64,000 nt of DNA from positions 124,001 through 188,000 of the IMG/VR virus record IMGVR_UViG_3300024252_000004; one strand, 5' to 3'. This document shows positions 17,851-38,181 of this stretch, piece after piece. The first letter of the stretch is position 1, and each line of letters begins with the position of its first letter. A program made the position numbers and the translations under genes. Under the pieces are notes generated by a model. The model was not told the origin of the DNA, did not search any database, and saw nothing but the letters and a program-made list of their open reading frames with translations.

Positions 17851-17931
17851 TGGGGTGCAAAACCTTTCTAAGTAACTGACAAGGTGTTATAGATGGGTGG
17901 AGCGAAAAACTACACACAACGGGCGGACAGC

Positions 17932-18708
17932 ATGGGTAAGGGTTCACGGGTCGAACTGACCAATATGGTGATCGACGCGGCACTCGCCGCGACTGGACAG
18001 AATGTCAGTTACTCGCGGGACGTGCCCAATGGGTTCGTCTCCGCTACTTTCCCCGACCGTATGGGTCGGGACGGGAACCTGAACCCGGTGGACGGCGGCG
18101 GTAAGCTGTTGATTACTCCGGCGAAAGAGTCGAAGGCCGGGCGCGGTCAGGTGTTCTTTGACGTTCACGGGATTTTCGATGGGCTGGAGATCGGGATTAG
18201 TCTGAAGGTGTCAGACTACATCGGCGACGATCACGCCCCGAGAAACTCCATCATCTCAGGTTCCAAGGCTGAGCACTACTTCGGGATGCATCTTGCGGCG
18301 CAGCGGGGGACGTTGCTCCCGGTGATCCAGTTCTGGCAGGACGCCAGCGGGCAGTGGTGGCGCTGCGCTTTTGACGCAGGCCGCATTCTGCGGGAGCGCC
18401 GCCCGAACCTGACGGTGGGGTGGGATAAGCTGCTCCACTCCGAGATCCCGAACATGGCCGCGTGCGGTCAGCTTGATCGCCTGGAGGCGATCACGGGCGA
18501 GCGTCCGCCCATCGTGGCGCTCGGCGAGGGCGGAGCGATCGCGATCTCGCCGCTCGTGCGGGGGCGCGGGAAATACTGCTACCTGTCGGCGAAGATCAGC
18601 CACGCCCGAACGGGTCACGGGTGGACGCCCGTGGACGCCCCTCGCCTGCCGGAGAGCTACGGCGAACTGTTGGAATGGACCGGAGAGCAGGGTGAGATGA
18701 TCGGCTGA
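17932..18708 (+). CDS. Putative PD-(D/E)xK restriction-endonuclease-like protein
   Basis: FFDVHG...GISLK resembles a D...SxK nuclease active site; the ATG at 17893 overlaps the -10, so ATG 17932 is preferred. Confidence 0.45.
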   Translation: MGKGSRVELTNMVIDAALAATGQNVSYSRDVPNGFVSATFPDRMGRDGNLNPVDGGGKLLITPAKESKAGRGQVFFDVHGIFDGLEIGISLKVSDYIGDDHAPRNSIISGSKAEHYFGMHLAAQRGTLLPVIQFWQDASGQWWRCAFDAGRILRERRPNLTVGWDKLLHSEIPNMAACGQLDRLEAITGERPPIVALGEGGAIAISPLVRGRGKYCYLSAKISHARTGHGWTPVDAPRLPESYGELLEWTGEQGEMIG

Positions 18709-18789
18709 GACAAAGGGGGCTCCGGCCCCCGAACCCCGCCCCGTACCGCTTCGGCGGACGGGGCATTAGGGGCAGGAAAGGAGACGCGC

Positions 18790-19212
18790 ATGGAGCCGCA
18801 CGAGATTGAGGATCTGATTGATATTCCGGCCGCAAAGGCTGAGATCATCCGGCGGCTGGACTGGCGGGGATGGCGACGGCGGCTCTTGATCAAGCGGATG
18901 AACGCTTGCACGACCGCCGATCAGCTTTCGCGGTTCAATTGGAACCGGCTGAACCCTAACCCGGATGATGAGGATCTGATTGGGTGGGTGCTTGATGCGG
19001 CCTTTGATGAGATCAAGCGTGCGAACACGCCTCCCGAGGATCTCACGCGCCGCGTGATTTGGTTCGCGGAAGATGGCAGGACGGTGGAGCGGGTTCGGGA
19101 CATCGATCCGGCTTCACTGTTCACCAAGTCGGGCCAGCCGAACGCACAGGCACGCGATCTGCTTCACGAGATTTTCGGAGCGAGGATCGTCAAGCTCCAG
19201 AGGATGGGTTGA
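18790..19212 (+). CDS. Hypothetical protein
   Basis: GGAG RBS, GC3-rich codons. Confidence 0.75.
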   Translation: MEPHEIEDLIDIPAAKAEIIRRLDWRGWRRRLLIKRMNACTTADQLSRFNWNRLNPNPDDEDLIGWVLDAAFDEIKRANTPPEDLTRRVIWFAEDGRTVERVRDIDPASLFTKSGQPNAQARDLLHEIFGARIVKLQRMG

Positions 19213-19442
19213 TGCGGCATGAAGGATGGATCCCCGTGGGGCAGTTGGTCATTGACCGGATGCCCCTGAACCCGGCTACGCTCTCGTGTGCGAACGCGAT
19301 TCTTGAAGGGGTCGAAATGCCTCCGATCAAGGTCCAGGCGTTGCCCGATGGCCGGTGGAAGGTTCGGGACGGTCGGCACCGTGCGGTCGCGCATAAGCTT
19401 ACGGGCAAGGCGCGAATCCTGGCTAAGTGGGGCACGCGATAG
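19212..19442 (+). CDS. Stand-alone ParB/Sulfiredoxin-like N-terminal domain protein
   Basis: MPPIKV....GRWKVRDGRHRAVAH motif; TGATG coupling to the upstream gene. Confidence 0.7.
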   Translation: MRHEGWIPVGQLVIDRMPLNPATLSCANAILEGVEMPPIKVQALPDGRWKVRDGRHRAVAHKLTGKARILAKWGTR

Positions 19443-19501
19443 TTTTCTCCCCGGCAGGTTGCCAGCCTGCCGGGGAGCGGGGAGAAAAACATTTCAAATG
19501 C

Positions 19502-19538
19502 TGGCACGGGTTTTGCAGAGAATGCAACAACTGTGCCA
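19502..19538. promoter_or_regulatory. Convergent twin sigma54 site palindrome
   Basis: TGGCACGGGTTTTGCA-gagaa-TGCAACAACTGTGCCA. Confidence 0.85.
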
Positions 19539-19639
19539 ACGTGTGAGCGTGTGCCTTTTTTCTCCCTGGGGCTGGGGTGAAAAAGAAAACAACTAAGTAA
19601 CTCACAGGATGTTATATCAAGACACCGGAGGTTCTTCCA

Positions 19640-19936
19640 ATGTTTCTGATCCAGATGCCCAGCGCCGCGCTTCCCGGGCGCATGTGCTACTACGATGGCC
19701 CGGCCGAGAACCCGCAGGTCGCGCCGGTGGAGCCCATGAGACGGGCAACCATGCGGGGGACGGGGTTCGATGATGTTTGGCTCGCGTTGGAGGTCCTTGA
19801 GGACTTTCAGTTCGACGCGAAGCACGCGCCGGCCACGCTGAACATGCTCGGAGGGTACGACTACACCGAGCGGCTCATGAAGGGCTGCATCGTGCTGGCC
19901 TCCGAGGTCGAAGGAGTCGAGGTGACCCAGGGCTGA
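19640..19936 (+). CDS. Hypothetical protein
   Basis: GGAGG RBS directly after a promoter copy. Confidence 0.8.
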   Translation: MFLIQMPSAALPGRMCYYDGPAENPQVAPVEPMRRATMRGTGFDDVWLALEVLEDFQFDAKHAPATLNMLGGYDYTERLMKGCIVLASEVEGVEVTQG

Positions 19937-19942
19937 GCCGGG

Positions 19943-20037
19943 CCCTTTCGGGCCCTCAAGAAAACACCGCTGACCGCCGCCTGTGTCGGCATTCGTTCCT
20001 CCAAGGTCAGCGGTGTTTTCTTGAGGGCCCGAAAGGG
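19943..20037. repeat. Perfect 33-bp inverted repeat with a 29-nt loop
   Basis: CCCTTTCGGGCCCTCAAGAAAACACCGCTGACC (19943-19975) is the exact reverse complement of 20005-20037. Confidence 0.95.
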
Positions 20038-20067
20038 GAGAAAAGATTTTCATTCTTGATAAGGAAC

Positions 20068-20104: not shown

Positions 20105-20172
20105 TCAATCTTTTCTCCCTGTTGTGAGGGGGTGAAAAGAAAGACACCTAAGTAACTCGTAAGATGTTATAG

Positions 20173-20550
20173 AGGGGTGCCGCGACGGCACTGAGCATGA
20201 CAGCGAGTCGGCGCCGACGACTTCGGCGAACCGACAACGACGAAACTAATAGCGAGAGGCTGAAGTTGACTCACAGACGTGTTCATCGCTGCCCACCGTC
20301 CGGGGCATAAACGGACGGCGGCGAGTAGTCGCTTGCGTGGATACCTTGGGGCCGGCAGTCCTGGGGCAAACTAAACGTAACGATGAAGCACCGGGTGTGA
20401 GGGAACGTGAAGACAGGACTCTGCCGGGTCTGGTCATGACACCTAAAACCCTCCTTTGTGACTCTGAGCATTAACCGGGCGACGGCTCGGTTCTGAGAAA
20501 GCAAAGAACGATTCCCCGTTGGGCAGCAAATGCTGTTGCCCAGCGGGACC
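20173..20550 (+). ncRNA. Putative ~380-nt structured non-coding RNA
   Basis: Follows the promoter copy at 20165; no plus-strand ORF; multiple stems (CCGTCCG/CGGACGG, CCGGCAGTCCTG/CAGGACTCTGCCGG, AACCGGGC/GCTCGGTT) and a 3' hairpin. Confidence 0.6.
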
Positions 20551-20584
20551 TCCGGGGAGAAAAACATTTCAAGCCTCGAAAGGT

Positions 20585-20621: not shown

Positions 20622-20739
20622 GTTTATATGTTCTTTTTCTCCCCTGGCTGAGAATCTGGGGTGAAAAAGAAAACAACTAAGTAACTCACAGGGTGTTATA
20701 GAAGGACGTGAGAGAAACACCCAAACGGAGCATCCCACC

Positions 20740-21192
20740 ATGTCCGACAAGTTCACCCCCCTCTTCGCCGATGCCGCGCCCAAGCGGCAGACCTTCACCG
20801 AGAAGGTGATGAGCAAGGCGCCCGTGTCCTTCGGCACGGACGACCTCGGGAACCCGGTCGTCGGGGTCGGGATCCCCGGCTACGGTGGCTGCGGGGCGGG
20901 GGGGGCCATGCTGCTGCGGCCGGAGAACATGCAGAACTTCTGCACGGCCATCCGCAACGCCGTCGATGGTGTGGGTCCCGACCCGCTCCAGGTCGCCGTG
21001 GAGACTATGACTCGCACGGGAGAGGGGGAGATCAGCTTCAAGCTGAGCCACATGCCCCGGTCCCAGACGATCACGATGTCGTCCGCCGAGGCCATCGAGT
21101 TCGCAACGCTCGTGGAGCGGATGATCACCGCCTGCGAGAAGAAGGCGCAGGGTCCCGAGACGGACGGCGAGGAGGCGACCGACGGGGAGTGA
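20740..21192 (+). CDS. Hypothetical protein, possible PUR/PC4-like nucleic-acid-binding fold with acidic tail
   Basis: Two beta-rich+helix units and an E/D tail; architecture parallels 32276-32863. Confidence 0.6.
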   Translation: MSDKFTPLFADAAPKRQTFTEKVMSKAPVSFGTDDLGNPVVGVGIPGYGGCGAGGAMLLRPENMQNFCTAIRNAVDGVGPDPLQVAVETMTRTGEGEISFKLSHMPRSQTITMSSAEAIEFATLVERMITACEKKAQGPETDGEEATDGE

Positions 21193-21264
21193 TCTCCGCC
21201 CCGCCCCGGGAGGCTTCGGCCCCCGGGTTCCGGGGAGAAAAGATTTTCATTTTTGATAAGGAAC

Positions 21265-21300: not shown

Positions 21301-21417
21301 TCAATCTTTTCTCCCCTGTGTGTGTATGGGGGTGAAAAAGAAAACAACTAAGTAACTTATAAGATGTTATAGAGAGGTGCCCGACAGACCGTGGCACCCA
21401 AACTCTGGAGAAATCGC

Positions 21418-21954
21418 ATGTCCTTCACGCCTCCGCACTCGCACTCCCGCTCCGTCGCTGGCCTCGGACGGCTTCTCGTCGCCGTCATGATCTCCGGCGA
21501 CAAGGCGCTCATCGCCCTCAAGTCGGCGGAGCAGGCTGTGGATGGGGCGCGGACGCGCCTGACCGTGTGGTTCCCCAACGATGAGCAGTGGCCGACCGAC
21601 GCCGAGGACAATCGCGAGGTGATCAGCGCCTTGTCCGTCGCCAACGGGGAGGTGAAGCACGCCCGGCTGATGCTGGACGGCGTCAAGGTCTCGCGGGCCG
21701 CCGGCCTCGACTTCCTGACGAGCCTGCACGAGGAGGTCGCGGCCTGCTCTGACCGCCTGTTCGTCAACCCCTACACCGGGAAGGGCGGAAAGACCTACAT
21801 GGCGTTCTTCGGCGAGGGCGACGACATCGAGCACCGGGGCCAGACCCACCGCGAGTTGCGGGACACCCTCCGCGCGAAGATCAAGAAGGCGGGCCTGGAT
21901 CCGGTGAAGGTCCAGGCGGACCACGGCTACGGCCGAGGGCGTGGCCGGCGCTGA
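21418..21954 (+). CDS. Hypothetical protein
   Basis: GGAG RBS before ATG 21418; strong GC3 codon bias. Confidence 0.8.
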   Translation: MSFTPPHSHSRSVAGLGRLLVAVMISGDKALIALKSAEQAVDGARTRLTVWFPNDEQWPTDAEDNREVISALSVANGEVKHARLMLDGVKVSRAAGLDFLTSLHEEVAACSDRLFVNPYTGKGGKTYMAFFGEGDDIEHRGQTHRELRDTLRAKIKKAGLDPVKVQADHGYGRGRGRR

Positions 21955-22127
21955 GCCGCACCCTGACGGGAGCTTCGGCTCCCCGAAGGGGGAGAAAAAC
22001 ATTGCAGAAGCATATGTGTATGCTTTTTCTCCCCTGTGCGTGTGTGTCGGGGTGAAAAGAAAAACAACTAAGTAACTCATAGGATGTTATTACAAGGTGT
22101 AAGGAACCCAAAAGCGGAGCATTGAAC

Positions 22128-22310
22128 ATGGACACGCCGACCATCATCATCGTGGATCTCTACGGGAAGGACGGGCGACCCGTCCGCACGGGAATCACGT
22201 TCCACAGCAACGACGAGGCGACCGCGAAGGAACAGGCTTCCGAGTTCGCGACACACCACAAGTCGCGGGGGAAGACCGTAAAGGCCCGGCGTCCGAAGAA
22301 GAAGCGTTGA
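22128..22310 (+). CDS. Small basic hypothetical protein
   Basis: GGAG RBS, KKKR C-terminus. Confidence 0.75.
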   Translation: MDTPTIIIVDLYGKDGRPVRTGITFHSNDEATAKEQASEFATHHKSRGKTVKARRPKKKR

Positions 22311-22315
22311 CGCAT

Positions 22316-22406
22316 GTGGGGCCGGGCAGGCGGACGCGGGTTCGATTCCCGCATCAGCCGGTCGCAAGCGATAGCTTGCCGGAGGGTTCGATTCCCTCCC
22401 CCCCAC
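22316..22406 (+). ncRNA. tRNA-like element with two T-arms
   Basis: GCGGG-TTCGATT-CCCGC (22336-22352) and GAGGG-TTCGATT-CCCTC (22382-22398); closing GTGGGG/CCCCAC; internal helix 22322-22331 / 22374-22382; no anticodon arm. Confidence 0.65.
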
Positions 22407-22531
22407 GGGGAGAAAAACATAACACCTTATCAAGATATGAGACTTTTCTCCCCTGCGTGTGCGTGTCGGGGTGAAAAACAATTCAACTAAGTAACTCATA
22501 GGATGTTATTCTAAAGTGTAGGAGGTTCCCG

Positions 22532-22834
22532 ATGCGAGTGCAGAACGACGACGGCATGTTCGAGTTTCAGACGGATTGCCGTCGCTGGCTGTGTATCCAG
22601 ACGACCCGGAAGGGACGGCGGGAGTTTGCTCCCCGTGTCCTCGTGCCGTATGCGTACGCCGGGAGTCTCTCTGCTCAGGCTCGCGCCGAGGGTGCGACCA
22701 GCGCGGACTTCGGAATCGTGGAGCCCAAGGTCAAGAAGCCGCGTGCGCCCAAGGCTCCGCGCAAGCCTCGTCAGCCTCGCAAGGTGAAGGCTCGGATGCC
22801 GGAGGGTTTCGTGCCCCTGGATCTGGGGCTCTGA
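22532..22834 (+). CDS. Hypothetical protein with Lys/Pro/Arg-rich (histone H1-like) tail
   Basis: GGAGG RBS; KVKKPRAPKAPRKPRQPRKVK. Confidence 0.75.
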   Translation: MRVQNDDGMFEFQTDCRRWLCIQTTRKGRREFAPRVLVPYAYAGSLSAQARAEGATSADFGIVEPKVKKPRAPKAPRKPRQPRKVKARMPEGFVPLDLGL

Positions 22835-22906
22835 ACGGCAAAAGGTCCCGATCACCAAGTGATCGGGACCTCCGGGGAGAAAACTTTTGCGTTTATCTTG
22901 ATGAGG

Positions 22907-22943: not shown

Positions 22944-23020
22944 CCCAGGGGAGAAAAGATTCATATGTATATGCTGGGGTGAAAACCTTAGCACACAGGA
23001 AACTGGTAGGGTGTTATAGA

Positions 23021-23710
23021 AGGGTGCCGGAAAGACCCGGCAAACAGATGGATAAGGAGAATCGATAGAGTCTGCGAGAAGTGCGTGTCTCTCTTCTAAA
23101 CGCAACGCTTTGTAGCTCGTAATACCTCAGTCACCACGCAGGCGAATGCGTACCGGTGGTGACAGTTTGCCAGTCCGACGTGAAGAACAGCAGTGGTGGA
23201 TACCGGGAAGGGAAGCGGCAGCACCGTGAATAGCCGACCCGGAAACGCGAAATCGATAGTACAGACTCCCAGTAACGTGATACGCGCCCTTCGGGGAAAG
23301 CTTAACCAGTCTGTCTCGTAAGTGCATGATACCAAAGTGCAGTCCTTTAAGGGATGTAGCAGGCAACCGGAGCCGAGAACACCGAAAGGCAAATCCGGGA
23401 CTGAGGAAATGAGGTCGAAAAAGGATCGAAAGTCTGCGATCACCACCGCCATGGCGGGGTCAATCCAGGCGACGGAATCTAAGCTACTCGGTTAAGCAAC
23501 CTGAGACTAAAGACTTCCGGCGGGACTCTGCCGACATAGATAACTATAGAGGATGGACACGGAAAAGATGGGCTGCCCGGTGCAGACCAAGATGTCCATA
23601 ACATTTGCGCGAAGAGGTAGCTCCTACGAAGGCAAATCCTGTAAAGTTACCGCCCCCCACTCACGCGCCTTTGGCCGGTCATGAGTGGGGGGCGGCTCCT
23701 TTTGTTTTCC
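23021..23710 (+). ncRNA. Putative ~690-nt large structured non-coding RNA
   Basis: Runs from the promoter copy (23012) to a terminator (23650-23710); no credible ORF; long-range helices CCTCAGTC 23125 / GACTGAGG 23399 and GTAGCT 23112 / AGCTAC 23482; UUCG/GAAA tetraloops. Confidence 0.7.
23650..23710 (+). terminator. Intrinsic terminator
   Basis: 14-bp stem CCGCCCCCCACTCA / TGAGTGGGGGGCGG followed by CTCCTTTTGTTTT. Confidence 0.75.
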
Positions 23711-23822
23711 CCGTATGTCAAGCTTTTCTCCCCTGCGTGTGCGTGTCGGGGTGAAAAACAATTCAACTAAGTAACTCATAGGGTGTTATATCAAAGTATA
23801 ACAAAACCAAAGAGCAATCAAG

Positions 23823-24452
23823 ATGACTATCGCCGGTGATAGCCGCGACACGCGGAACCCTCAGAAGTCCTGGGTCGCTTGGACGGCGTCTCTCTGGGCT
23901 CAGAAGATCCTGCGGGCCGAAGTAAATCGTCCCGAGGTAGTGTCTCTCACGGGGGACTATGTCCAGGCGCACATGGAGGAGCTTTTGCCCTTCCATCGTC
24001 GGCATTTCTTCGAGATGGATCCTGTCCAGCTTCGCAAGATGCGGCGGAAGTTCAAGCGGCTCCCTCGCACGTTCACACGGGACGAGATCAGCGACACGAC
24101 CATCCATCAGGGGAACATCTTCAAGACCGACGTAGTTTCGGATGCCGATGGGGCGTATTACGACTGGGACATCACCGGCTCGATTCGTGAGGCCATCAAG
24201 TATGGTCTTGAAGATGCTGTGTGGGACGCTTTTGAGTCTCCGGGGACTCGGTGCATGGCTCTGACGGTTTCCCGTCGGATGCCGGGTGGCAAAGCGAAAA
24301 CGTCGGAGCTTTGGCGGGAGATCGTCAATGGGATCGGCGGAGTGTTCGGAGACTCTCGTGTGTGGGAGTTCGAAGAGCCGATCCACTACGGCCGGGCACG
24401 CCTTGGCTGCGGCAACATGATGCTCATCCGTGCGGTCATCCGCGAGCGGTGA
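23823..24452 (+). CDS. Hypothetical protein (possible class I methyltransferase-like fold)
   Basis: VVSLTG..., FFEMD, IHQGNIF and YYDWD fall at strand ends as in a Rossmann fold; weak call. Confidence 0.55.
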   Translation: MTIAGDSRDTRNPQKSWVAWTASLWAQKILRAEVNRPEVVSLTGDYVQAHMEELLPFHRRHFFEMDPVQLRKMRRKFKRLPRTFTRDEISDTTIHQGNIFKTDVVSDADGAYYDWDITGSIREAIKYGLEDAVWDAFESPGTRCMALTVSRRMPGGKAKTSELWREIVNGIGGVFGDSRVWEFEEPIHYGRARLGCGNMMLIRAVIRER

Positions 24453-24482
24453 AAAGAGCAATAGAAGATGTAAGGGGGCAAA

Positions 24483-24608
24483 GTGGAAATCGTCATCGTC
24501 TGGTACTCTGCGAACGAACGCGAAGACACTCCCGTGGAGGGGTTCTACCGATGGGATGATTCCCATTGTGGCGACAGCCTTTCCTTCGTCGGGACGGAGC
24601 TTCCATGA
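24483..24608 (+). CDS. Small hypothetical protein (41 aa, not in ORF track)
   Basis: AAGGGGG RBS, GTG start, ATGA overlap with the next gene. Confidence 0.55.
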   Translation: MEIVIVWYSANEREDTPVEGFYRWDDSHCGDSLSFVGTELP

Positions 24609-24919
24609 AAAGTCACGAAAAGTCTGATAGCAAACGCTGGGTGATTCAGCGCTGCGTTCGCTGCGGGCATTGGTGGGACCCGCATGGAATCTGGACAACC
24701 GACTGTCCGGCTCCGACCGAAGCTGCGCAGAGTCTGATGGCAGATCTGCGTGTGCTTGGCATCCGAAGCTCCGCCAAGCAGAATGTGGTGTTCGCATGGC
24801 GTACGAGGCGGGTGAATCCGTGGAATCGTAGGGAGTTCGATGCTCGGCACCAAACGGCCGAGGAAATCGAGAAAGAACTGCGAACCCATCCCACACGTCA
24901 GTCCCTTTACCGGGGCTGA
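24605..24919 (+). CDS. Hypothetical protein with CxxC
   Basis: RCVRCGH motif; translationally coupled start. Confidence 0.65.
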   Translation: MKSHEKSDSKRWVIQRCVRCGHWWDPHGIWTTDCPAPTEAAQSLMADLRVLGIRSSAKQNVVFAWRTRRVNPWNRREFDARHQTAEEIEKELRTHPTRQSLYRG

Positions 24920-25047
24920 GGTCGGGGAGAAAAGATTGTTATTCTTGTGAAGGTATTCTCCCCGATGCCTAAGCCGGGGTGAAAAACAATTCAACTAAGT
25001 AACTCACAAGATGTTATATCAAAGCGTAACAAAGGGATGAAGAAAGA

Positions 25048-25389: not shown

Positions 25390-25391
25390 TC

Positions 25392-30596: not shown

Positions 30597-30714
30597 GGAG
30601 TCAGGGCTTCGGCCCTCCCTCAGGGGAGAAAAAGATTGCATTATCGATAAGGGGTGAAAACCTTAACACACAGGAAACTCATAAGACGTTATAGAGTGAC
30701 ACATGGAGAGGGTA

Positions 30715-30873
30715 ATGTGGTCATACAGTGAAGCTTCAATCCTCGCATCGCTTCCGCTTTTCGCGGTTGCAATGCTGATTGACTTCGAAGTCTTCGCTGT
30801 CCCAAGAACGACCATCTATCTCCTTCCGCTTATTCCGTTCGTGACGTTTCTGTTCTCCCGAGGTAAATACTGA
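30715..30873 (+). CDS. Small membrane protein (52 aa, not in ORF track)
   Basis: GGAGAGGG RBS, two hydrophobic segments, TGATG coupling. Confidence 0.65.
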   Translation: MWSYSEASILASLPLFAVAMLIDFEVFAVPRTTIYLLPLIPFVTFLFSRGKY

Positions 30874-31637
30874 TGGACATCGAACGATTCAAGAAGCTGG
30901 CAAGTCAGGCGCGTAGCTTCCGAGGTCTCATTGACTTCGCGGACCCCTACTGGGAGTCCTCCGTTTTCTTCGAGATTCCCTCGGCCAATGAGAAGGACGA
31001 GTACGCTTGTCCGCTCGCATCGTCGGACAATCTGGATTTCCTGGCAGGGATGTTCGGTGCGGGTAGCGACCTTCACGTCTGGAACTGCGTGTTCGTGTCT
31101 GAGCCTTCCGAAGAGGTTCGGGAGAGCTACAGTACCCACGGCAACAAGATGGCGCGGTACGTCCTGTGGACGGACAACCCAAGGTATCGCTCCGTCGATT
31201 TGATGAAGAACTTCATCCGTGACTTCACGCTCGGTTGGCGGCTGGCTCTCGCGCCCATCCGTGCGGCAGAGAAGGCCGCCGCAAAGGAAGCGGAAGAAGC
31301 CTTCCAGTCTCGCTGCGATGATTGGGTGAAGGTTTTCGGAGATGCCATCCAAAACTACAAGGTCGATTCGCGTGGGAACGAGTTCGCCGGGATTACCTTC
31401 AAGAAGGACCCCGACTTCAGAGCCTTCTACAGCCGCGTGACCTCGAAGGTCATGACGGCAGAGCAGTTCAGTGTGTACCGCCCCGGGACGCAGGAACTCT
31501 ATGGCAGGGGCAAAACTGTGAACGGGTCATTCGATCTGTACACGTTCGGTGCTCACCTGGAGATGTGGACCAACTGCTACCCGGATGATCCCGCGAACAA
31601 GGCTTACCGAAAGATCCGGCATCTTTGCCGGGTCTGA
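30873..31637 (+). CDS. Hypothetical protein
   Basis: 254 aa, coupled start, GC3-rich. Confidence 0.8.
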   Translation: MDIERFKKLASQARSFRGLIDFADPYWESSVFFEIPSANEKDEYACPLASSDNLDFLAGMFGAGSDLHVWNCVFVSEPSEEVRESYSTHGNKMARYVLWTDNPRYRSVDLMKNFIRDFTLGWRLALAPIRAAEKAAAKEAEEAFQSRCDDWVKVFGDAIQNYKVDSRGNEFAGITFKKDPDFRAFYSRVTSKVMTAEQFSVYRPGTQELYGRGKTVNGSFDLYTFGAHLEMWTNCYPDDPANKAYRKIRHLCRV

Positions 31638-31683
31638 CCACGGGGCTTCGGCCCACCATCTATTCTGCTGAGAGGAGAGAATC

Positions 31684-31869
31684 ATGAGTATCCCAGGTTC
31701 CGATGGTGTCCGACAGACTTACATCAGTTTGGCACGCACGATCGCAAACGGGCACAATGCTTCGCCCGAAGAGATCAGTTGGGCCATCAGCATGCTCGAA
31801 AGCTTCAAGCGCCCTTCTCCGAAGAGTGTTTGGTACCTGAATAAGCTCAAGGCAAAGGTGGGAGGCTGA
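31684..31869 (+). CDS. Small hypothetical protein
   Basis: GAGGAG RBS. Confidence 0.7.
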   Translation: MSIPGSDGVRQTYISLARTIANGHNASPEEISWAISMLESFKRPSPKSVWYLNKLKAKVGG

Positions 31870-31941
31870 CGCCCTCCCTCCGGGGAGAAAAAGATTGCAT
31901 TGCCAAAGCGGGGAGAAAAGATTTATTCTTGTCAGGAATGT

Positions 31942-31978
31942 TGGCACGATCCTTGCATACACTGCAAGAGCTATGCCG
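31942..31978. promoter_or_regulatory. Convergent twin sigma54 site palindrome
   Basis: TGGCACGATCCTTGCA-tacac-TGCAAGAGCTATGCCG. Confidence 0.8.
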
Positions 31979-32085
31979 GAAGTTTTTCACCCCGGGGAGA
32001 AAAGATTGTCATGGGGTGAAAAAGATGACAATGCCCCACCGGGGAGAAAAGATTAGTACACAGGAAACTCATAGGGTGTTATAGA

Positions 32086-32162
32086 GTGTCGTCAGAGAGG
32101 CCGAGAGGATGGCCCACGCTACGGCAACGCATACTGAGTCGGTCATTCAGAGGAATAGACCA
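32086..32162 (+). ncRNA. Possible small structured RNA between two promoter copies
   Basis: Hairpins GGCC-GAGAGGAT-GGCC and GGTC-ATTC-AGAG-GAAT-A-GACC; no credible ORF. Confidence 0.35.
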
Positions 32163-32275
32163 AAGTTTTCTAAACAACTCATGATGTGTTATCATAGAGC
32201 GTCTGAAACGACCCAACCCGAGAGCTTGACTCTCAACACCCCGAGAGCTTGTCTCTCAAAGCCAAGGAAATCCCC

Positions 32276-32863
32276 ATGTCCAACACCGACTTCGAAGCCC
32301 TCGACGGTCTTGACCTCTCCGACAACAAGACGCTCAGCAGCATCGACATTCTCGGCGCGAACTTCACCGCCGGTCGCAAGGATGGGCAGCTCTGCGTCGT
32401 CTTCAAGACCAACGGCGGCAAGGGCTCCGGTCCCCAGACCGTTCGCGCGACCGAGCTCATCGAGTTCCGCGACACCCTGCACGAGTGTGTCGCCCGAGGG
32501 GAGGGGAGCACGGTCGAGGCCGGTTACATCCCCGCGCCGATCCTGCTCGGACGCAGCTTCGCGCTCGTCGCGAATCCCGGTCCCGGTCGCAACAAGAAGA
32601 ACGAGGTGACGCCCGCGCCCTTCGGCGGACGCGACTACTACGAGTGGAACAGCAACACGGGGCAGGGCACCGCGTCCAAGGGCTCCAAGCCCGCCAAGGT
32701 TCCGGTGGACGAGATTGATGGTTTCCTGGCCCTCTTCGACAAGAACGTGGACCAGACGGTCAGCCGGTTGATCTCCCTGGGGCTCATGGCGGACGAGGAC
32801 GCGGACGAGGACGAGGACGAGGGCGACGAGGTCGATCTCGACGGCATCGGTGACGAGGACTGA
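32276..32863 (+). CDS. Putative single-stranded nucleic-acid-binding protein (PUR/PC4-like repeats, long acidic tail)
   Basis: Two beta-sheet+helix units ending ELIEFRDTL / EIDGFLALF; tail DEDADEDEDEGDEVDLDGIGDED; AAGGA RBS. Confidence 0.55.
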   Translation: MSNTDFEALDGLDLSDNKTLSSIDILGANFTAGRKDGQLCVVFKTNGGKGSGPQTVRATELIEFRDTLHECVARGEGSTVEAGYIPAPILLGRSFALVANPGPGRNKKNEVTPAPFGGRDYYEWNSNTGQGTASKGSKPAKVPVDEIDGFLALFDKNVDQTVSRLISLGLMADEDADEDEDEGDEVDLDGIGDED

Positions 32864-33169
32864 ACGGTCACAGGTTGAGGGGCTTAACCGCCCCGAAACC
32901 AAGGCTCAACCAGCCGGTTAATCCCGGCTGGTTCGAGCTTCATTGTGTTTGTAAAGTTTTTCACCCCAGATGCGGGTGAGCACATGCAAAAGTTTTCACC
33001 CCCCGCTCGTAAGATTTTTCACCCCATACCTGCAAGCACACGCAAAAGTTTTCTCCCCGGCGGCCGGGTTGGGGTGAAAACCTTAGCACACAGGAAACTC
33101 ATAGGGTGTTATAGAGTGACGCCGGTAGAACTAACCGGTTAGCTTCCAAACCATGACCCCGAGGTCCAC

Positions 33170-34040: not shown

Positions 34041-34145
34041 ATGGGGGAGAAAAGATATACATCCTTGTCAAGGAGTGAAAACTATAACATAGGTCTTTTC
34101 TAAACTTCTTGTAGGGTGTTATAGAATGTTGCCAAACAACGGGGA

Positions 34146-34688
34146 ATGCAGATGCCTTTGACTGCGAAACAGGAAGCGCGAGTGGACATGCTCCTCCCGT
34201 ATTTCGATGAGGAATCCTTGGCAGCTTTCGCTGAGGAAGAGAACAGCCGGAACAACCCCGAAGACATCGTGGAACGAATCCTCACGGAGGTCACGGTCTA
34301 CGAAAAGGCAGGCGTCCGCAATCAGTACACGGGAACATACCGTGGTCATCCATTCATCATCGGAGAGGAAAACCGATACGTTGATGATGGGTTCACCCTT
34401 CGTGAAATGTATATCCGAACGCAGTACGGTGCAGGACGTGCGAGCAAGAAGATGATGGTCTTCATGATCTCCGGAAAGGTCGGAGGATATCCGACCGATG
34501 GACTGCGGTTCACAGACGAATTCAAGGGTCCGCTTGCGGACGTTCTCCAGTGTCTCTTCGAAGCTGCAAAGACGCGGTACAGAGATGCTGAGATTGAGCG
34601 TCTGATGAAGGCAGACACGAACACACCCACCCCAAAGGATGATGGAGATTTCGGACTCGATTCTCTCATCGTCACTCCACCCAACTGA
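34146..34688 (+). CDS. Hypothetical protein
   Basis: GGGG RBS after a promoter copy, 180 aa. Confidence 0.8.
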   Translation: MQMPLTAKQEARVDMLLPYFDEESLAAFAEEENSRNNPEDIVERILTEVTVYEKAGVRNQYTGTYRGHPFIIGEENRYVDDGFTLREMYIRTQYGAGRASKKMMVFMISGKVGGYPTDGLRFTDEFKGPLADVLQCLFEAAKTRYRDAEIERLMKADTNTPTPKDDGDFGLDSLIVTPPN

Positions 34689-34715
34689 GGCGAAAGCCTG
34701 CGAAGTGAGGTCAGC

Positions 34716-34922
34716 ATGAACACAACTCTCGAAACCCCGTATCTCGGTCGCTCCGATGGTGGCAAGTTCGGATGGCGGAAGCCCAGCCGTCGCACCGAGG
34801 CTGCCGAGCGACAGACCGCACGCGATGCCCGAAGCACCGCCGAGCAGATCGCCGAACTCGATGCCCGTCTGGGTGTCGGCATCGGAGCGACGAAGGAGCG
34901 CGCACGTCTCTCCGCAGAGTAG
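34716..34922 (+). CDS. Small hypothetical protein
   Basis: GAGG RBS. Confidence 0.7.
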   Translation: MNTTLETPYLGRSDGGKFGWRKPSRRTEAAERQTARDARSTAEQIAELDARLGVGIGATKERARLSAE

Positions 34923-35040
34923 AGAAACCCTGTGTCCCCTGGTTTTCCAGGGGACACTCGGGGAGAAAAGATTTGCAGCCCCCAAGGGGAGAAAACTATA
35001 ACATTAGTCTTTTCTAAACTTCTTGTAGGGTGTTATATTA

Positions 35041-35300
35041 AAGTGTCCCCAGAGAGCAGGATACAACGGAAGTTACGCAAGCAAACACTGCGATGATTGC
35101 AAGCATACCAAATAATGTAAGCCGTCTGAGCAGGCAGGAACCTGCAAGGTAAGCATTAGGCAATGAGCGGGATATACCATTGAGACATGGAAGCTGATTG
35201 AGCGGGAAGGAACCTGCGAAGCGAGTGTCATAGGGAGCGCTGATTAGGCGCTGTGTTGACGGCGAGGGTTAAGCCACTTAGGGGCCAGTCAACTTTAAAC
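35041..35300 (+). ncRNA. Putative structured RNA / long pre-tRNA leader
   Basis: Follows the promoter copy at 35031; no ORF; internal repeat GAGC(A/G)GG(C/A)AGGAACCTGC; stems GTGTCC/GGATAC, AGCGC/GCGCT, GTTGAC/GTCAAC. Confidence 0.5.
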
Positions 35301-35305
35301 GTAGA

Positions 35306-35382
35306 GCCGCCTTAGCTCAGTTGGATAGAGCGTCGGCTTTCTAAGCCGGGGGTCGCTGGTTCGAGTCCAGCAGGCGGTACCA
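35306..35382 (+). tRNA. trnR: tRNA-Arg (anticodon UCU) with encoded CCA
   Basis: Acceptor GCCGCCT/AGGCGGT, D-arm GCTC-AGTTGGATA-GAGC, anticodon loop TTTCTAA, T-arm GCTGG-TTCGAGT-CCAGC, ACCA end; 77 nt. Confidence 0.97.
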
Positions 35383-35384
35383 CT

Positions 35385-36170
35385 TCACACACTCTCGGAG
35401 GCGGCAATACGCAGGGCTCAACCAACACACGTTTCGGCGTGGTATATACGGCCCGGGTTTACGAATAAGACTGTTGGGAATAGTAGACCAGATGCAGGGG
35501 AAGATCCTGTCCGAGACACACATCCACGGACAAGCTCAGCCGTGGACGAAAAGATGGGCGATTAGAGCATATGATTCTTAAGAGGGGCTGGTGCCCATGT
35601 CGAAAGACGAAACCAGTGCAACCCTCCATGCCCCGGATTTGCTGCGGGGTAGGATGTAGCAGGGGAGGATAGACGGTAAGACAGCATTACCTTCACGTCC
35701 CTGACATCCGCCAAGACAACCCAATCCTTGCGTAAGACACGCGCGCTTAGATAGCCAATAGGTTCAGACATGTTTTGATTAGTGGGCGACTAGCCCGCCA
35801 CTCAGTTAACGAGTGGGAATCTTAAGTGACTAACGATTGAGTTAAGTTGACAGAGTTGAGTTGAATAAAAATTGCGTTCATTGTGTCTTGATTGTAGCAC
35901 ATGCAGTTGAGACTGTCCGAAACGATAACCATAAAGGTGGACATAGACGAGGGCCCGTCGAGCCCTATGTGTAACGACATGGCGACCAGCATTAGATGCG
36001 GTCGTAACGTTTGGGTCGGATTACTTCTTGGTAAGGTGTTGGTCTAAGCGCAACGTAAATGCTTTCGAAGGGCACGCACACCCGTTCTTTGATTGCATAA
36101 GGCGTAAGGATAGTAATGGTAGCCGCCGCACACCCAAACATAACACCATCCACAGTACCAAAAATGGGGG
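35385..36170 (+). ncRNA. Putative large (~790 nt, possibly two) structured RNA downstream of the tRNA
   Basis: No credible plus-strand ORF before ATG 36175; many hairpins (CACGT-TTCG-GCGTG, CCACGG/CCGTGG, GTC-GAAA-GAC, CCACTC/GAGTGG, ACATAG/CTATGT, GTTTGGGT/ACCCAAAC). Confidence 0.6.
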
Positions 36171-36174
36171 AGTC

Positions 36175-36420
36175 ATGAGAAGTAGAGATGTCGTGAAAGC
36201 CTGGGATAATGGAGTCCCAGCAGAAACAAAGAACCTGCGTACTGACGGTTTCGATCTGTGGTCTTACGAAGTGCTGATTGGTACTCGCCCAAACGCAAGC
36301 GCACAAATCGTCTTCGACTACACAGCTCCGGCTGGACATTTCGAATCACACACAACTTCGGTTCATGTGGGACTCGCGAAAAGAATCACGAACGCAAACG
36401 TGATTGAGCCTCCGGAATAA
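36175..36420 (+). CDS. Hypothetical phage protein
   Basis: GGGGGAG RBS; VVKAW...NLRTDG..LWSY..LIG pattern recalled from phage proteins (unverified). Confidence 0.75.
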   Translation: MRSRDVVKAWDNGVPAETKNLRTDGFDLWSYEVLIGTRPNASAQIVFDYTAPAGHFESHTTSVHVGLAKRITNANVIEPPE

Positions 36421-36422
36421 AG

Positions 36423-36530
36423 AGTAACCCCGAACACTCACAAGAATACTGGACATGCATCATGTTCAGCCTTCTTCTCTCTACAGGGTGTTTTATCCCG
36501 TGTTCTTTTGAGTGCTCGGGGTGTACTCCA
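36423..36530 (+). other. Long imperfect hairpin / structured leader
   Basis: GAGTAACCCCGAACACTCACAAGAATAC pairs with GTGTTCTTTTGAGTGCTCGGGGTGTACTC (about 28 bp) around an inner TGGACATG/CATGTTCA hairpin. Confidence 0.6.
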
Positions 36531-36664
36531 CATATACGCGTCCGCTACAAAGCGGAGTAACTCACCAATACCATTCGGGAGAGTATCAGGTTGTAGGACG
36601 ATCTGATTCATCTTGGCGCGTAGTGATAGTCCTTTCATATACACGAAACGGTAGGGAGCAGGCA

Positions 36665-37294
36665 ATGGCGACGAAGGAAAATTTCCAGAATCTCAAGCCT
36701 GACGTGATCGCAAAGACTCGCCTGTACTCTGACAACTCCCAGAGCTTCACAGTGCTCCATGGTGTCACCATGGAAGCGGCGCGTTATCACCTGAGTGTCA
36801 ATGAGAAGCTTGGTGGTAAGCCAGCACGGTCAATGCTCTTCAGGAAAATCTGCGACTTCACCTGTTTCGATGACAACCTCGGACGTGCGTACATGCCGCA
36901 ACCGTGGGCAAAGGGAATCCTTCCCATCTTCCCAAAGAAGTGGATGGTGAGCTTCGCCAATGGTTCGAAAATCGATCTGAGCTACACGGTTAGGCCGGGA
37001 AGCAAAAGGCAGATCGTTGGATATTCCTACGCTCTCGTACGACAAATAACCACTGGTGGGATCGGCATCTCCAAATTGACCAAGATTCTTTTGGAGGTTG
37101 GTTACTCGGGCCTCACCGTAGGTGACGTGATGGCAGCCGTAAAGTCCAGACCAGATCTGTTCGCGCCGCATAAGGGGCTTTCACAGTGGACCGTCAAGAG
37201 GGCTTATGACGCTGAGCCTATCTTGGAGGGTGATGCGGTGGCACAAACCAACAAGACGCTTCTGAAGGTCTTCAGACTCCTGCGTGACAAGTGA
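36665..37294 (+). CDS. Hypothetical protein
   Basis: GGGAG RBS before ATG 36665. Confidence 0.75.
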   Translation: MATKENFQNLKPDVIAKTRLYSDNSQSFTVLHGVTMEAARYHLSVNEKLGGKPARSMLFRKICDFTCFDDNLGRAYMPQPWAKGILPIFPKKWMVSFANGSKIDLSYTVRPGSKRQIVGYSYALVRQITTGGIGISKLTKILLEVGYSGLTVGDVMAAVKSRPDLFAPHKGLSQWTVKRAYDAEPILEGDAVAQTNKTLLKVFRLLRDK

Positions 37295-37536
37295 GTCCTC
37301 CGGTCTGGATCAATCTGCTTCCGCACGGATTCTATAAGCTCACAAGCTACAAGGGAATTGGATGGATGGGATTCCATTACCATGACTGTGGTGTGGAGTT
37401 TATCGAACGGTTCCAGGTGAAGTCATATTCGTTCTACTTTTGGGGAATGACTGACTGGCCCACCACGATGATTGGTCTGCTTGGAAGCGGGGAACTGATC
37501 AAGGTTGAACGCCACGAGATAAGGGGAGAGGTTTAG
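37291..37536 (+). CDS. Hypothetical protein
   Basis: GTGA coupling. Confidence 0.65.
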   Translation: MSPPVWINLLPHGFYKLTSYKGIGWMGFHYHDCGVEFIERFQVKSYSFYFWGMTDWPTTMIGLLGSGELIKVERHEIRGEV

Positions 37537-37826
37537 CCTCGTCCCCTCCGGGGAGAAAAGATTTACATCCTTATCAAACGAACATAGACCACCCTTCCCG
37601 GCATGGCTGTTCGAATATGTACACGCCGCATTCAGTTTCAGAAGATGCCAATTGAATGACTTGGTTTGGCCCGGATAATTTACCCAGTAAACGATAGTTT
37701 TTTCTTTGTAATTAACTACCGCACTTATCTACCTCTTCTATTCTCGACGGTGTGTTGAAGGTTCTCCCGAAGGTCTACCTAACAGTTAGTAAGTGAAAAA
37801 GTCCCTTACAGGGCTCTTCCATAACC

Positions 37827-37851
37827 CTATAACCCCCTACCAGTTATTTAG
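37827..37851 (-). promoter_or_regulatory. Reverse-oriented copy of the cassette promoter
   Basis: Minus strand reads CTAAATAACTGGTAGGGGGTTATAG; compare AACTGGTAGGGTGTTATAG at 23001. Confidence 0.6.
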
Positions 37852-38181
37852 AAAAGAACAATGTATCACCACAACACACCATCATCTAACCCTGCCCCCA
37901 CCGGGGAGAAAAGTTTTGCACGGCACCACCCACCACCGGGGTGAAAACTTTAACATCAGGTTTAACATGTCTATCTATCATCATTCAAGACTCAAACATA
38001 CCAGCACATACCACTCAACTCCTTAGGGTACATACTATGGCATTCAATCCAGAGAGCAAATCGAACTATCCTTTACTGATAAGAATGTGATAAGCATCGC
38101 TCTATTCTAATTTTCTCATAGGACGTTATCAGTAGTTGAACTGTACCGGATCAATCAGACCCAACTGTCAGGAGTTTAACA

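What the first reader, a model, noticed from the sequence alone, without database searches (positions are those of the whole stretch)
17868..37950. About 20-cassette array with modular, homogenised spacers that could shuffle or excise genes
Seen: 21 plus-strand copies of one promoter-like motif, each heading 1-6 short genes or an ncRNA and ending in a hairpin plus GGGGAGAAAA. Spacers share long identity: 60 nt are identical at 22443-22502 and 23723-23782, and 20035-20172 closely matches 21232-21372. Established: T4-type phages carry promoter-stem-loop (PeSL) cassettes that recombine and form mini-circles. Inference: this is an analogous but sequence-unrelated and more elaborate hypervariable early/host-takeover module. 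Recombination between the 60-nt repeats would excise the cassette holding the H1-like gene and the 690-nt RNA.
Basis: partly seen in the sequence, partly recalled or inferred. Interest (0 to 1): 0.78.

Follow-up and report, generated by a model that had tools for sequence, protein, structure and literature searches.

The report
Modular promoter-hairpin gene-cassette array in phage
A 20-kb GC-rich stretch of an uncultured 395-kb marine jumbo phage holds about 21 self-contained promoter-gene-hairpin cassettes joined by conserved modular spacers; related phages differ by whole cassettes there, much as at T4's promoter-stem-loop regions, but no ongoing excision was seen.

Summary
Window 17.9-38 kb is the only high-GC island of a 395,127-bp marine jumbo-phage genome. 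It holds 20 strict and 1-2 variant plus-strand promoter motifs. Each heads 1-6 small ORFan genes or a non-coding RNA, and 18 of 20 units end in a GC hairpin followed by GGGGAGAAAA.

The promoter is an island variant of a genome-wide phage promoter. The island-specific parts are:
- the 10-mer, its inverted copy and its near-copy GGGGTGAAAA at about -55 to -46;
- sigma54-type TGGCAC-N5-TTGCA palindromes.

The same architecture occurs at the syntenic site in a relative (L059/L063) and, less completely, on four metagenomic contigs. The modules are therefore functional regulatory elements.

Shared genes stay collinear between relatives. Whole cassettes are replaced between retained spacers, inserted or deleted. 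On single contigs some are translocated or inverted. Some paralogous spacers are more alike than their orthologues.

Six assemblies of the same strain (of 24 contigs carrying the first island protein) have no indel across the first half of the island. DNA contigs from two further samples show only reference junctions. No integrase was found.

Verdict: a T4 PeSL-like hyperplastic array of a new, more elaborate type. Shuffling is supported over evolutionary time. Excision and mini-circles are untested. Metatranscriptome contigs cover only the two non-coding RNAs in the 6 kb laid.

The parts
17600..17868 (.). Upstream control region at the strand switch. Two leftward sigma54-like sites (17612, 17638) and three rightward ones (17738, 17767, 17835) flank an AT-rich centre with TGTAAAG-type repeats.
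   Evidence: The same layout is seen in relatives L059 and L067.
17869..19488 (+). Cassette 1. Promoter core at 17882. Genes 17893-18708 (PD-(D/E)xK nuclease-like; the true start may be 17932), 18790-19212 and 19212-19442. Hairpin, then 10-mer at 19479.
   Evidence: Fold evidence.
19594..20044 (+). Cassette 2. Promoter at 19607, gene 19640-19936, long hairpin, 10-mer at 20035. The preceding spacer holds the palindrome 19502-19538.
20149..20563 (+). Cassette 3. Promoter at 20162, non-coding RNA 1 (about 20172-20553), hairpin, 10-mer at 20554.
   Evidence: No ORF. An RNA contig covers 20195-20478. Conserved in the relative.
20678..21241 (+). Cassette 4. Promoter at 20691, gene 20740-21192 (acidic tail), hairpin, 10-mer at 21232.
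21349..21998 (+). Cassette 5. Promoter at 21362, gene 21418-21954, hairpin, 10-mer at 21989.
22069..22416 (+). Cassette 6. Promoter at 22082, gene 22128-22310, two tRNA T-arm-like minihelices (22325-22400), 10-mer at 22407.
   Evidence: Weak tmRNA tRNA-like-domain hit at 22309-22353.
22488..22883 (+). Cassette 7. Promoter at 22501, gene 22532-22834 with a Lys/Pro-rich H1-like tail, hairpin, 10-mer at 22874.
   Evidence: Orthologues in relatives r and x.
22996..23712 (+). Cassette 8. Promoter at 23009 and structured non-coding RNA 2 (about 690 nt), ending in a canonical GC stem plus U tract.
   Evidence: RNA contigs in two metatranscriptomes. Conserved in relatives r and x, with 40 covarying pairs. 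No Rfam family matches.
23768..24933 (+). Cassette 9. Promoter at 23781; genes 23823-24452, 24483-24608 and 24605-24919; 10-mer at 24924. This block is replaced in relative r.
24996..26215 (+). Cassette 10. Promoter at 25009; genes 25048-25389 (RF-1/GGQ domain), 25392-25601, 25602-25787 and 25784-26170; hairpin; 10-mer at 26206.
   Evidence: Pfam RF-1 at E 2.7e-18.
26279..27385 (+). Cassette 11. Promoter at 26292; genes 26328-26843, 26840-27169 and 27194-27370; 10-mer at 27376.
   Evidence: No orthologue in relative r.
27412..27812 (+). Cassette 12. Promoter at 27425, gene 27460-27771, 10-mer at 27803. It is preceded by a minimal spacer.
   Evidence: Weak homologue in relative z.
27851..28587 (+). 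Cassette 13. Promoter at 27864, gene 27876/27903-28346 and gene ending at 28561, 10-mer at 28578.
   Evidence: The second gene has a 61% identical homologue in relative z.
28691..30189 (+). Cassette 14. Promoter at 28704; genes 28750-29073, 29070-29363, 29402-29890 and 29909-30145; 10-mer at 30180. The preceding spacer holds the palindrome 28610-28646.
   Evidence: All four genes are conserved in relatives r and z.
30252..30632 (+). Cassette 15. Promoter at 30265, small membrane-protein gene (frames 30305... and 30441-30596), hairpin, 10-mer at 30623. In relative r it is replaced by three unrelated genes.
30671..31891 (+). Cassette 16. Promoter at 30684; genes 30703-30873, 30873-31637 and 31684-31869; 10-mer at 31882. 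It is replaced in relative r.
31892..33090 (+). Cassette 17. Multi-copy spacer, promoters at 32074 and a variant at about 32170-32200, gene 32276-32863 (PUR/Whirly-like fold with an acidic tail), then an inverted spacer (32864-33090) carrying four inverted 10-mers.
   Evidence: Fold evidence. 80% identical to the relative's copy. The cassette is inverted on contig L076.
33091..34053 (+). Cassette 18. Promoter at 33104, gene 33170-33616, non-coding RNA 3 (about 33617-34043), 10-mer at 34044.
   Evidence: The RNA is conserved in relative r.
34101..34969 (+). Cassette 19. Promoter of the genome-wide type at 34114; genes 34146-34688 and 34716-34922; hairpin; 10-mer at 34960.
35015..37559 (+). Cassette 20. 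Promoter at 35028; long leader or non-coding RNA 4 containing tRNA-Arg(UCU) at 35306-35382; genes 36175-36420, 36665-37294 and 37291-37536; 10-mer at 37550.
37560..38181 (+). Right border. A conserved non-coding stretch with the last 10-mer (37903) and its near-copy (37938), followed only by a decayed promoter. The next promoter (38121) heads gene 38182-38385 outside the GC island.

Best explanation
This is the hyperplastic accessory-gene array of an uncultured marine jumbo-phage lineage. It works like T4-type PeSL regions but is built from different and more numerous modules.

Shown:
- About 21 autonomous units, each with a phage promoter, 1-6 small ORFan genes or a structured RNA, and a GC hairpin.
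- Spacers assembled from a small module set: GGGGAGAAAA directly after the hairpin; an optional CTTGATAAGG box; an optional sigma54-type -24/-12 palindrome; an inverted 10-mer that pairs with the first into a conserved-base hairpin; and the near-copy GGGGTGAAAA fixed at about -55 to -46 of the promoter.
- The promoter, 10-mer and sigma54-like modules and the GC-rich composition recur in relatives r, x and z. Two more distant contigs (y, v) keep the 10-mer. The first gene of r, x and y is only 49-67% identical in protein to the window's.

Inferred:
- The modules are transcription-control elements. They insulate or terminate each unit and carry an upstream promoter element or operator for a still unknown DNA-binding factor. 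They are not mere recombination scars.
- The same 60-140-bp modules recur in direct orientation every 0.4-2.5 kb. They therefore act as portable homology for general homologous recombination and gene conversion.
- That recombination replaces, inserts, deletes and occasionally moves or flips whole cassettes between co-infecting relatives.
- The turnover is visible at evolutionary distance, not within the sampled strain.
For: Motif statistics are. The A:A' hairpins fold with z-scores of -2.2 to -5.6, and complementarity extends beyond the 10-mer with different flanking letters.

The same architecture sits at the syntenic site of a 405,912-bp relative. It also occurs on contigs L067, L061, L075 and L076.

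Seventeen orthologue pairs are collinear. Blocks between retained spacers are unrelated: w30274-30606 against r10540-12153, and w30703-31869 against r12276-12834.

The closer pair r and z (about 88% nt identity) differs by a 1.8-kb four-gene insertion and a 0.25-kb one-gene insertion. Each insertion lies between a gene stop and the next spacer. Divergence between r and z is mosaic.

Order changes are seen on L067 and L061, and an inverted cassette on L076.

The spacers flanking the H1-like gene plus RNA pair share lineage-specific sequence in both phages. Nineteen of 31 spacers have their nearest neighbour in the same genome.

The 10-mer also sits between terminator and promoter outside the island. 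No integrase or resolvase is detectable.
Against: Within the strain there is no structural variation. Six assemblies are 99.93-99.96% identical with zero gaps over 7893-28708. The other IMG/VR contig is collinear.

DNA contigs of two further samples show only reference junctions. Contigs cannot show rare variants.

The translocation and inversion evidence rests on single short-read contigs. These could be mis-joined at the repeated spacers.

Some left breakpoints lie at a gene stop rather than inside a spacer.

The promoters are not sigma70-consensus, and the hairpins lack U tails. Promoter and terminator activity is therefore inferred. Expression timing is unknown.
Confidence: 0.65

Rival explanations
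1. A purely regulatory array. The spacers are only promoter, insulator and operator units. Cassette turnover happens by illegitimate recombination or ordinary phage mosaicism, and spacer similarity reflects functional constraint, not exchange.
For: All modules are conserved across lineages. Positional orthologues are usually the best between-genome match. The 10-mer also occurs at promoters outside the island. The strain population is invariant. Some breakpoints lie at gene stops.
Against: Constraint alone does not explain identical non-consensus segments shared by one spacer pair in each of two lineages. It also does not explain unrelated gene blocks sitting between retained orthologous spacers.
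Confidence: 0.2
2. A nuclease-driven cassette platform. The conserved first gene, a PD-(D/E)xK restriction-endonuclease or Holliday-junction-resolvase-like protein, cuts the spacer palindromes or cruciforms and so stimulates exchange, excision and inversion. This would be loosely integron- or homing-like.
For: The first gene is conserved in four lineages. Three weak but concordant lines point to a nuclease fold: Foldseek hits to Hjc, RecU and HincII; VIA Z 7.1 to DpnI with all top-50 hits in that superfamily; and Atlas restriction-endonuclease, RecU and Hjc clusters. The spacers contain long imperfect palindromes. One lineage has an inverted cassette.
Against: All fold scores fall in the range the tool describes as possibly just a common arrangement. 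No catalytic-motif test was done. Early phage nucleases usually attack host DNA. No variation is seen within the strain. No tyrosine or serine recombinase is present.
Confidence: 0.07
3. A selfish palindromic element. The unit running from GGGGAGAAAA to its inverted copy would be a MITE-like repeat that has spread through the intergenic gaps, as Correia or ERIC elements have.
For: The unit has terminal inverted 10-mers, a variable interior, an intergenic location and several subtypes shared across genomes.
Against: No transposase was found with the families searched. The units sit at orthologous positions in diverged phages. The direct copies outnumber the inverted ones and stand at a fixed distance from promoters. 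No target-site duplications were noticed.
Confidence: 0.05
4. A foreign island. The GC-rich block would be a recent horizontal acquisition or an assembly chimera.
For: GC is 53-62% against 42-46% in the flanks. GC3 is 0.47-0.93 against a median of 0.42.
Against: A GC-rich island with a low-GC left flank is seen in three other lineages (L059, L061, L075) and on L067, where the flank is not held. The island uses the phage's own promoter core. It is assembled identically in 24 contigs from several sources.
Confidence: 0.02

Closest known systems
PeSL (promoter-early stem-loop) cassettes of T4-type phage hyperplastic regions (Arbiol et al. 2010, PMC2839356; Comeau et al. 2014, PMC4122927)
   Same: Repeated composite promoter plus stem-loop motifs lie between small ORFan genes in a plastic region. 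Insertions, deletions and replacements between relatives are bounded by the motifs. The motifs act as portable homology.
   Different: - No sequence relationship.
- The promoter is not sigma70-consensus.
- The stem-loop lies upstream of the promoter region rather than overlapping the -35/-10 boxes.
- Extra modules are present: the 10-mer in direct, inverted and near-copy form, and the sigma54-like palindrome.
- One contiguous GC-rich island holds about a third of the genome's promoters.
- Several cassettes are non-coding RNAs.
- Mini-circles were not tested.
SPO1 host-takeover module and other dense early-operon regions (own knowledge; Stewart et al. 1998)
   Same: A compact block holds many short operons, each with its own strong promoter and terminator, encoding small proteins of unknown function.
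   Different: SPO1 uses consensus sigmaA promoters and lies in the terminal redundancy. No iterated spacer modules or cassette exchange are described there. Expression timing is not known for the array here.
Stoperators of cluster A mycobacteriophages such as L5 (own knowledge; Brown et al. 1997)
   Same: A short asymmetric site is iterated in intergenic gaps, mostly in one orientation relative to transcription.
   Different: Stoperators are 13-bp repressor sites spread genome-wide in temperate phages. Here the site is a 10-mer concentrated in one island, also present inverted and at a fixed promoter-upstream position. The binding protein is unknown.
Integron gene-cassette arrays
   Same: A tandem array of small mobile-looking cassettes is separated by imperfect palindromes.
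   Different: No integrase is found in the genome. Each cassette carries its own promoter. The palindromes have a conserved sequence rather than only a conserved structure.
Bacterial sigma54 (-24/-12) promoters
   Same: The spacing TGGCAC-N5-TTGCA is exact. Positions not used in the search also match the consensus: G follows TGGCAY in 47 of 59 sites. The control region has a divergent layout around an AT-rich centre.
   Different: Inside spacers the sites occur as face-to-face pairs. No phage sigma54 or enhancer-binding ATPase was found. The host is unknown and function is untested.

Membership tests
T4-type PeSL | Repeated composite motif containing an early promoter that matches the host sigma70 consensus, with an AT-rich upstream region | tested here: not met
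   Sigma70-consensus sites are not enriched: 7 found against 7.7 expected. The repeated motif ends in GTTATA with a different upstream box. An A-rich upstream tract is present.
T4-type PeSL | Stable stem-loop as part of the intergenic motif, acting as terminator or attenuator | tested here: inconclusive
   GC hairpins and a second conserved-base hairpin are present, with z-scores of -2.2 to -5.6. They lack U tails, and termination was not measured.
T4-type PeSL | Concentrated in hyperplastic regions, immediately upstream of ORFans | tested here: met
   Twenty of about 42 credible promoters lie in 18 kb. Twenty-nine of 30 island proteins have no Pfam hit.
T4-type PeSL | Indels and replacements between related phages bounded by the motifs | tested here: met
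   The right-hand breakpoints lie at spacers. Some left-hand ones lie at a gene stop.
T4-type PeSL | Recombination between nearby motifs yields mini-circles | not testable with these tools
   Only assembled contigs were available. No novel junction was seen.
Integron | Adjacent tyrosine-recombinase integrase and promoterless cassettes with attC sites | tested here: not met
   PF00589 and PF00239 are absent from the whole genome while the controls were positive. Every cassette has its own promoter.
Sigma54-dependent promoter | GG at -24 and GC at -12 with invariant spacing and the consensus TGGCACG-N4-TTGCW | tested here: met
   Sixteen sites in the window against 1.03 expected. All 13 strict genome copies lie in or beside the island. 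Fifty-nine sites occur in four lineages, with consensus G at the unsearched position in 47.
Sigma54-dependent promoter | An enhancer-binding AAA+ activator and sigma54 available | tested here: not met
   The phage encodes neither, while the controls were positive. The host is unknown, so host supply is not testable.
Stoperator-like operator array | Iterated asymmetric site with orientation bias, bound by a phage repressor | tested here: inconclusive
   Orientation is biased, with 25 plus and 8 minus copies of GGGGAGAAAA in the island. No binding protein was identified.
MITE-like repeat | Terminal inverted repeats with presence/absence polymorphism independent of the neighbouring genes | tested here: not met
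   The units sit at orthologous positions in diverged phages. No unit-only polymorphism was seen among the compared pairs.

The most novel reading that the evidence does not exclude
The array could be a new kind of phage control and exchange platform with four linked properties.
- Host sigma54 holoenzyme is recruited to conserved -24/-12 sites, either as genuine enhancer-dependent immediate promoters or as stable closed-complex roadblocks that insulate cassettes.
- An iterated 10-mer operator co-regulates about 20 promoters.
- The conserved first-gene nuclease acts on the spacer palindromes to promote cassette exchange.
- The block is kept GC-rich, either to match host codon use before the phage's 44 tRNAs are made or to evade AT-targeting silencers.

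The four conserved non-coding RNAs, two of them abundant in the sea, would be new RNA classes with takeover functions.
Probability: 0.15. Interest if true: 0.85.

Novelty: new variant of a known kind. Interest (0 to 1): 0.6.

Why it matters
It extends the PeSL principle beyond T4-type phages. In that principle, regulatory spacers double as recombination handles that let phages swap small accessory genes. Here it appears in an uncultured lineage of 0.4-Mb marine phages, with unrelated and richer modules.

It also gives concrete handles for experiment:
- a 30-bp promoter;
- a 10-mer candidate operator;
- sigma54-type sites in a phage, which is unusual;
- four conserved non-coding RNAs, two of them detectable in ocean metatranscriptomes.

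The conserved GC-rich composition of the array inside an AT-richer genome is a testable clue to how huge phages stage early expression.

Tried and rejected
- INPHARED megablast of the island gave no hit.
- Rfam at gathering and E-value thresholds gave only the tRNA and a weak tmRNA-like minihelix. The non-coding RNAs match no family.
- IMG/VR scans with the promoter and with a 25-nt RNA block found only the same phage.
- Helicase relatives in IMG/VR are at most 43% identical and lack the motifs.
- GTDB genome scans found nothing, so there is no host clue.
- A topoisomerase tblastn against cultured phages found no close relative.
- PF00940 (T7-type RNA polymerase) gave no hit, but its controls did not ring, so this test is uninformative.
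- No beta-prime domain was found. The 'sigma' hit is only a 157-aa HTH protein.
- No phage sigma54, enhancer-binding protein, integrase or resolvase was found.
- No paralogues exist among the island proteins.
- The joints reported by read laying looked like rearrangements at first. All of them map to other reference spacers.
- A paper search for sigma54 use by jumbo phages gave nothing relevant.
- Considered and dropped:
  - archaeal TATA/BRE promoters, because tmRNA, Shine-Dalgarno sequences and sigma54-type sites point to a bacterial host;
  - a T7-like promoter reading, because no polymerase gene was found (that test was uninformative, see above).

Full report
**Context**

The window is bases 124001-188000 of a single 395,127-bp virus record (Ga0233435_1000005). 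CheckV rates it complete. The genome carries 44 tRNAs and a tmRNA, plus helicase, PurZ-like and RNA-ligase genes. It is an uncultured jumbo phage.

More than 20 seawater or marine metagenomes from 2018-2019 hold it. It has no close cultured relative.

- The 23-nt motif occurs 15 times at up to 3 mismatches, with 0 expected.
- Its core RGRYGTTATH occurs 20 times on the + strand between 17882 and 35028. Variants lie at about 32170-32200 and at 38121.
- GGGGAGAAAA occurs 34 times against 0.31 expected.
- Eighteen of 20 units end in a GC hairpin followed at once by the 10-mer.
- The 60-nt identity is exact. The 138/141-nt pair shares 126 matches.
- Units carry 1-6 small genes. Only one of 30 tested proteins has a Pfam domain, the RF-1/GGQ domain at 25048-25389.
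- Four stretches after promoters have no ORF.

(i) The island is the only high-GC part of the genome.
- GC is 53-62% in the island against 42-46% in the flanks.
- GC3 is 0.47-0.93 in the island. The median over 179 outside ORFs is 0.42.

(ii) The promoter is not array-specific.
- Fifty of 51 core-pattern matches in the genome are on the + strand. Roughly 22 outside the island carry the upstream TTTTCTA box.
- Outside the island the consensus is a TTTTCTAAA box, about 12 nt, then GTTATA.
- Island copies keep the core but have a CTAAGTAAC or ACAGGAAAC box and an A tract. In 17 of 20 they also have GGGGTGAAAA at about -55 to -46.

(iii) The spacers are modular. In order they contain:
- a cassette-specific hairpin;
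- the 10-mer;
- an optional CTTGATAAGG box;
- an optional palindrome of two face-to-face TGGCAC-N5-TTGCA sites;
- an optional inverted 10-mer;
- the near-copy;
- the promoter.

The 10-mer and its inverted copy fold into a long hairpin. Complementarity extends beyond the 10-mer with different flanking letters. Z-scores are -2.2 to -5.6.

(iv) The TGGCAC-N5-TTGCA sites match the sigma54 -24/-12 consensus.
- There are 16 in the window against 1.03 expected.
- All 13 strict genome copies lie in or beside the island.
- Upstream of the array they are arranged divergently around an AT-rich centre. They face the four minus-strand genes on one side and the array on the other.
- In 59 sites from four lineages, the position not used in the search is the consensus G in 47.
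- The phage encodes no sigma54 and no enhancer-binding ATPase.

Consensus sigma70 promoters and U-tailed terminators are not enriched. No RNA polymerase gene was found. One of those tests had no working control. The 'sigma' hit is only a 157-aa HTH protein.

**Relatives**

The first island protein has homologues. One, 67% identical, lies on a 405,912-bp scaffold. I call that relative r (loci L059 and L063).

In r, the site after the same SOD gene and four minus-strand genes carries the same kind of island:
- high GC;
- at least 13 promoters;
- 33 copies of the 10-mer family;
- sigma54-like palindromes, with a 4-nt centre instead of 5.

L067 (x, 60% identity) and L075 (z, close to r) also have this architecture.

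L061 (y, 49% identity) keeps the GC-rich array, the 10-mer, its inverted copy and a near-copy upstream of the promoter. Its promoter is different and more sigma70-like. It has no sigma54-like pairs inside the array.

The 10-mer also sits between terminator and promoter at three places outside the island.

All this marks the modules as selected regulatory elements, and the GC-rich composition as an old, maintained trait.

**Is it a shuffling array?**

*Evidence for*

- Between the window (w) and r, 17 orthologue pairs (29-80% identity) are strictly collinear, but whole blocks differ.
- Two replacements are clean. Orthologous spacers are retained at 73-76% nt identity while the genes between them are unrelated:
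  - w30274-30606 (one gene) against r10540-12153 (three genes);
  - w30703-31869 against r12276-12834.
- r and z are about 88% identical in nt, yet they differ in three ways:
  - z has a 1.8-kb four-gene insertion, which includes homologues of two w genes that r lacks;
  - z also has a 0.25-kb one-gene insertion, and each insertion lies between a gene stop and the next spacer;
  - single genes drop to 53-68% identity between 90% flanks.
- On x, two genes lie upstream of the RF-1 gene that in r lie elsewhere. On y, two families are in reverse order.
- On L076 the most conserved cassette is inverted relative to its collinear neighbours. In w the spacer after that cassette carries four inverted 10-mers.
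- The two spacers flanking the H1-like gene and the 690-nt RNA share a lineage-specific variable segment in w and a different one in r. That is the signature of gene conversion.
- Overall, 19 of 31 spacers have their nearest neighbour in the same genome. Spacer subtypes and most positional orthologies are nevertheless preserved.

*Evidence against ongoing exchange*

- Twenty-four contigs carry the identical first protein. The six distinct places fetched are 99.93-99.96% identical with zero gaps over 7893-28708.
- The other IMG/VR contig is collinear.
- All loose ends and joints of DNA contigs from two further samples map to other reference spacers.
- Neither a tyrosine nor a serine recombinase is detectable.

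*Caveats*

- Contigs hide rare variants.
- The order changes on x, y and L076 rest on single short-read contigs, which could be mis-joined at the repeats.

**RNA**

Two metatranscriptomes hold the 690-nt RNA. Over the 6 kb laid, RNA contigs cover only 20195-20478 and 23038-23614. None covers the coding cassettes.

These contigs start 20-40 nt downstream of the motifs. That fits promoter use and stable, abundant RNAs, but it does not map transcript starts.

The 690-nt RNA is conserved in r and x. It has long invariant blocks and 40 predicted pairs with compensatory changes. It ends in a canonical U-tailed terminator. RNAs 1, 3 and 4 are conserved in r. None matches Rfam.

**Proteins**

- The conserved first protein models well, with mean pLDDT 82. 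Three weak but concordant methods point to the PD-(D/E)xK restriction-endonuclease or Holliday-junction-resolvase fold.
- The most conserved protein (32276-32863) looks like a two-repeat PUR/Whirly-type single-strand nucleic-acid binder with an acidic tail.

**Conclusion**

The array works like a PeSL region and is best filed as a new, more elaborate variant of that kind. Cassette turnover over evolutionary time is supported. Excision and mini-circles, early timing, the factor that reads the 10-mer, and the role of the sigma54-type sites all remain open.

Noticed in passing
window 16052-17074 (- strand gene): Almost all SNPs among six same-strain assemblies fall in this 340-aa gene. Six lie in 16282-16326 and three in 17033-17040 (or at 17053/17160/17174 in others). 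The 10.8 kb of island next to it has 0-1 SNP. This is a localised diversification patch.
   Followed up: partly
window 23019-23712; also 20172-20553, 33617-34043, 35038-36174: Four conserved non-coding RNAs match no Rfam family. The 690-nt one has 40 covarying pairs across three lineages, and it is present in ocean metatranscriptomes whose contigs do not cover the neighbouring genes. They may be new RNA classes.
   Followed up: partly
window 17400-17580: Iteron-like direct repeats (of the GGCTTAGGGAA and CGCTTAAACATAAAA types) lie at the strand-switch and GC-skew minimum. Contig L061 has four copies of a roughly 30-nt repeat at the same place. This may be an origin or a control region.
   Followed up: no
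window 22309-22400: Two hairpins with the tRNA T-loop sequence GGTTCGATTCC follow gene 22128-22310. There is a weak tmRNA tRNA-like-domain hit of 28.8 bits, below the gathering score.
   Followed up: no
window 30305-30694: The small membrane-protein gene reads in two overlapping frames. One has a signal-peptide-like N-terminus and runs through the spacer. The other (30441-30596) ends in a K8 tail before the hairpin. This could be a frameshift, a sequencing error or two genes.
   Followed up: no
window 37560-38181: A 620-nt non-coding stretch at the right border is conserved in the relative. It carries the last 10-mer pair but only a decayed promoter.
   Followed up: no
window 25005-25227: Both DNA runs show a hole in contig depth over the GGQ part of the RF-1-domain gene. 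This is probably the tool's filter for human-like conserved sequence and not a deletion, because other assemblies are gap-free here.
   Followed up: partly
genome (G000) 302460-302537, 325213-325615, 288535-288708; window 57513-58802: The genome holds a tRNA with anticodon CTA (amber-reading, called Pyl by ARAGORN), a tmRNA, a second RF-1-domain ORF and a PurZ-like adenylosuccinate-synthetase homologue. These hint at translation tinkering and perhaps a modified base.
   Followed up: no
window 19212-19442: A 76-aa ORF carries a DGRHR motif reminiscent of ParB/sulfiredoxin-type domains. It has no Pfam hit at E 0.01 and no orthologue in the relative.
   Followed up: no
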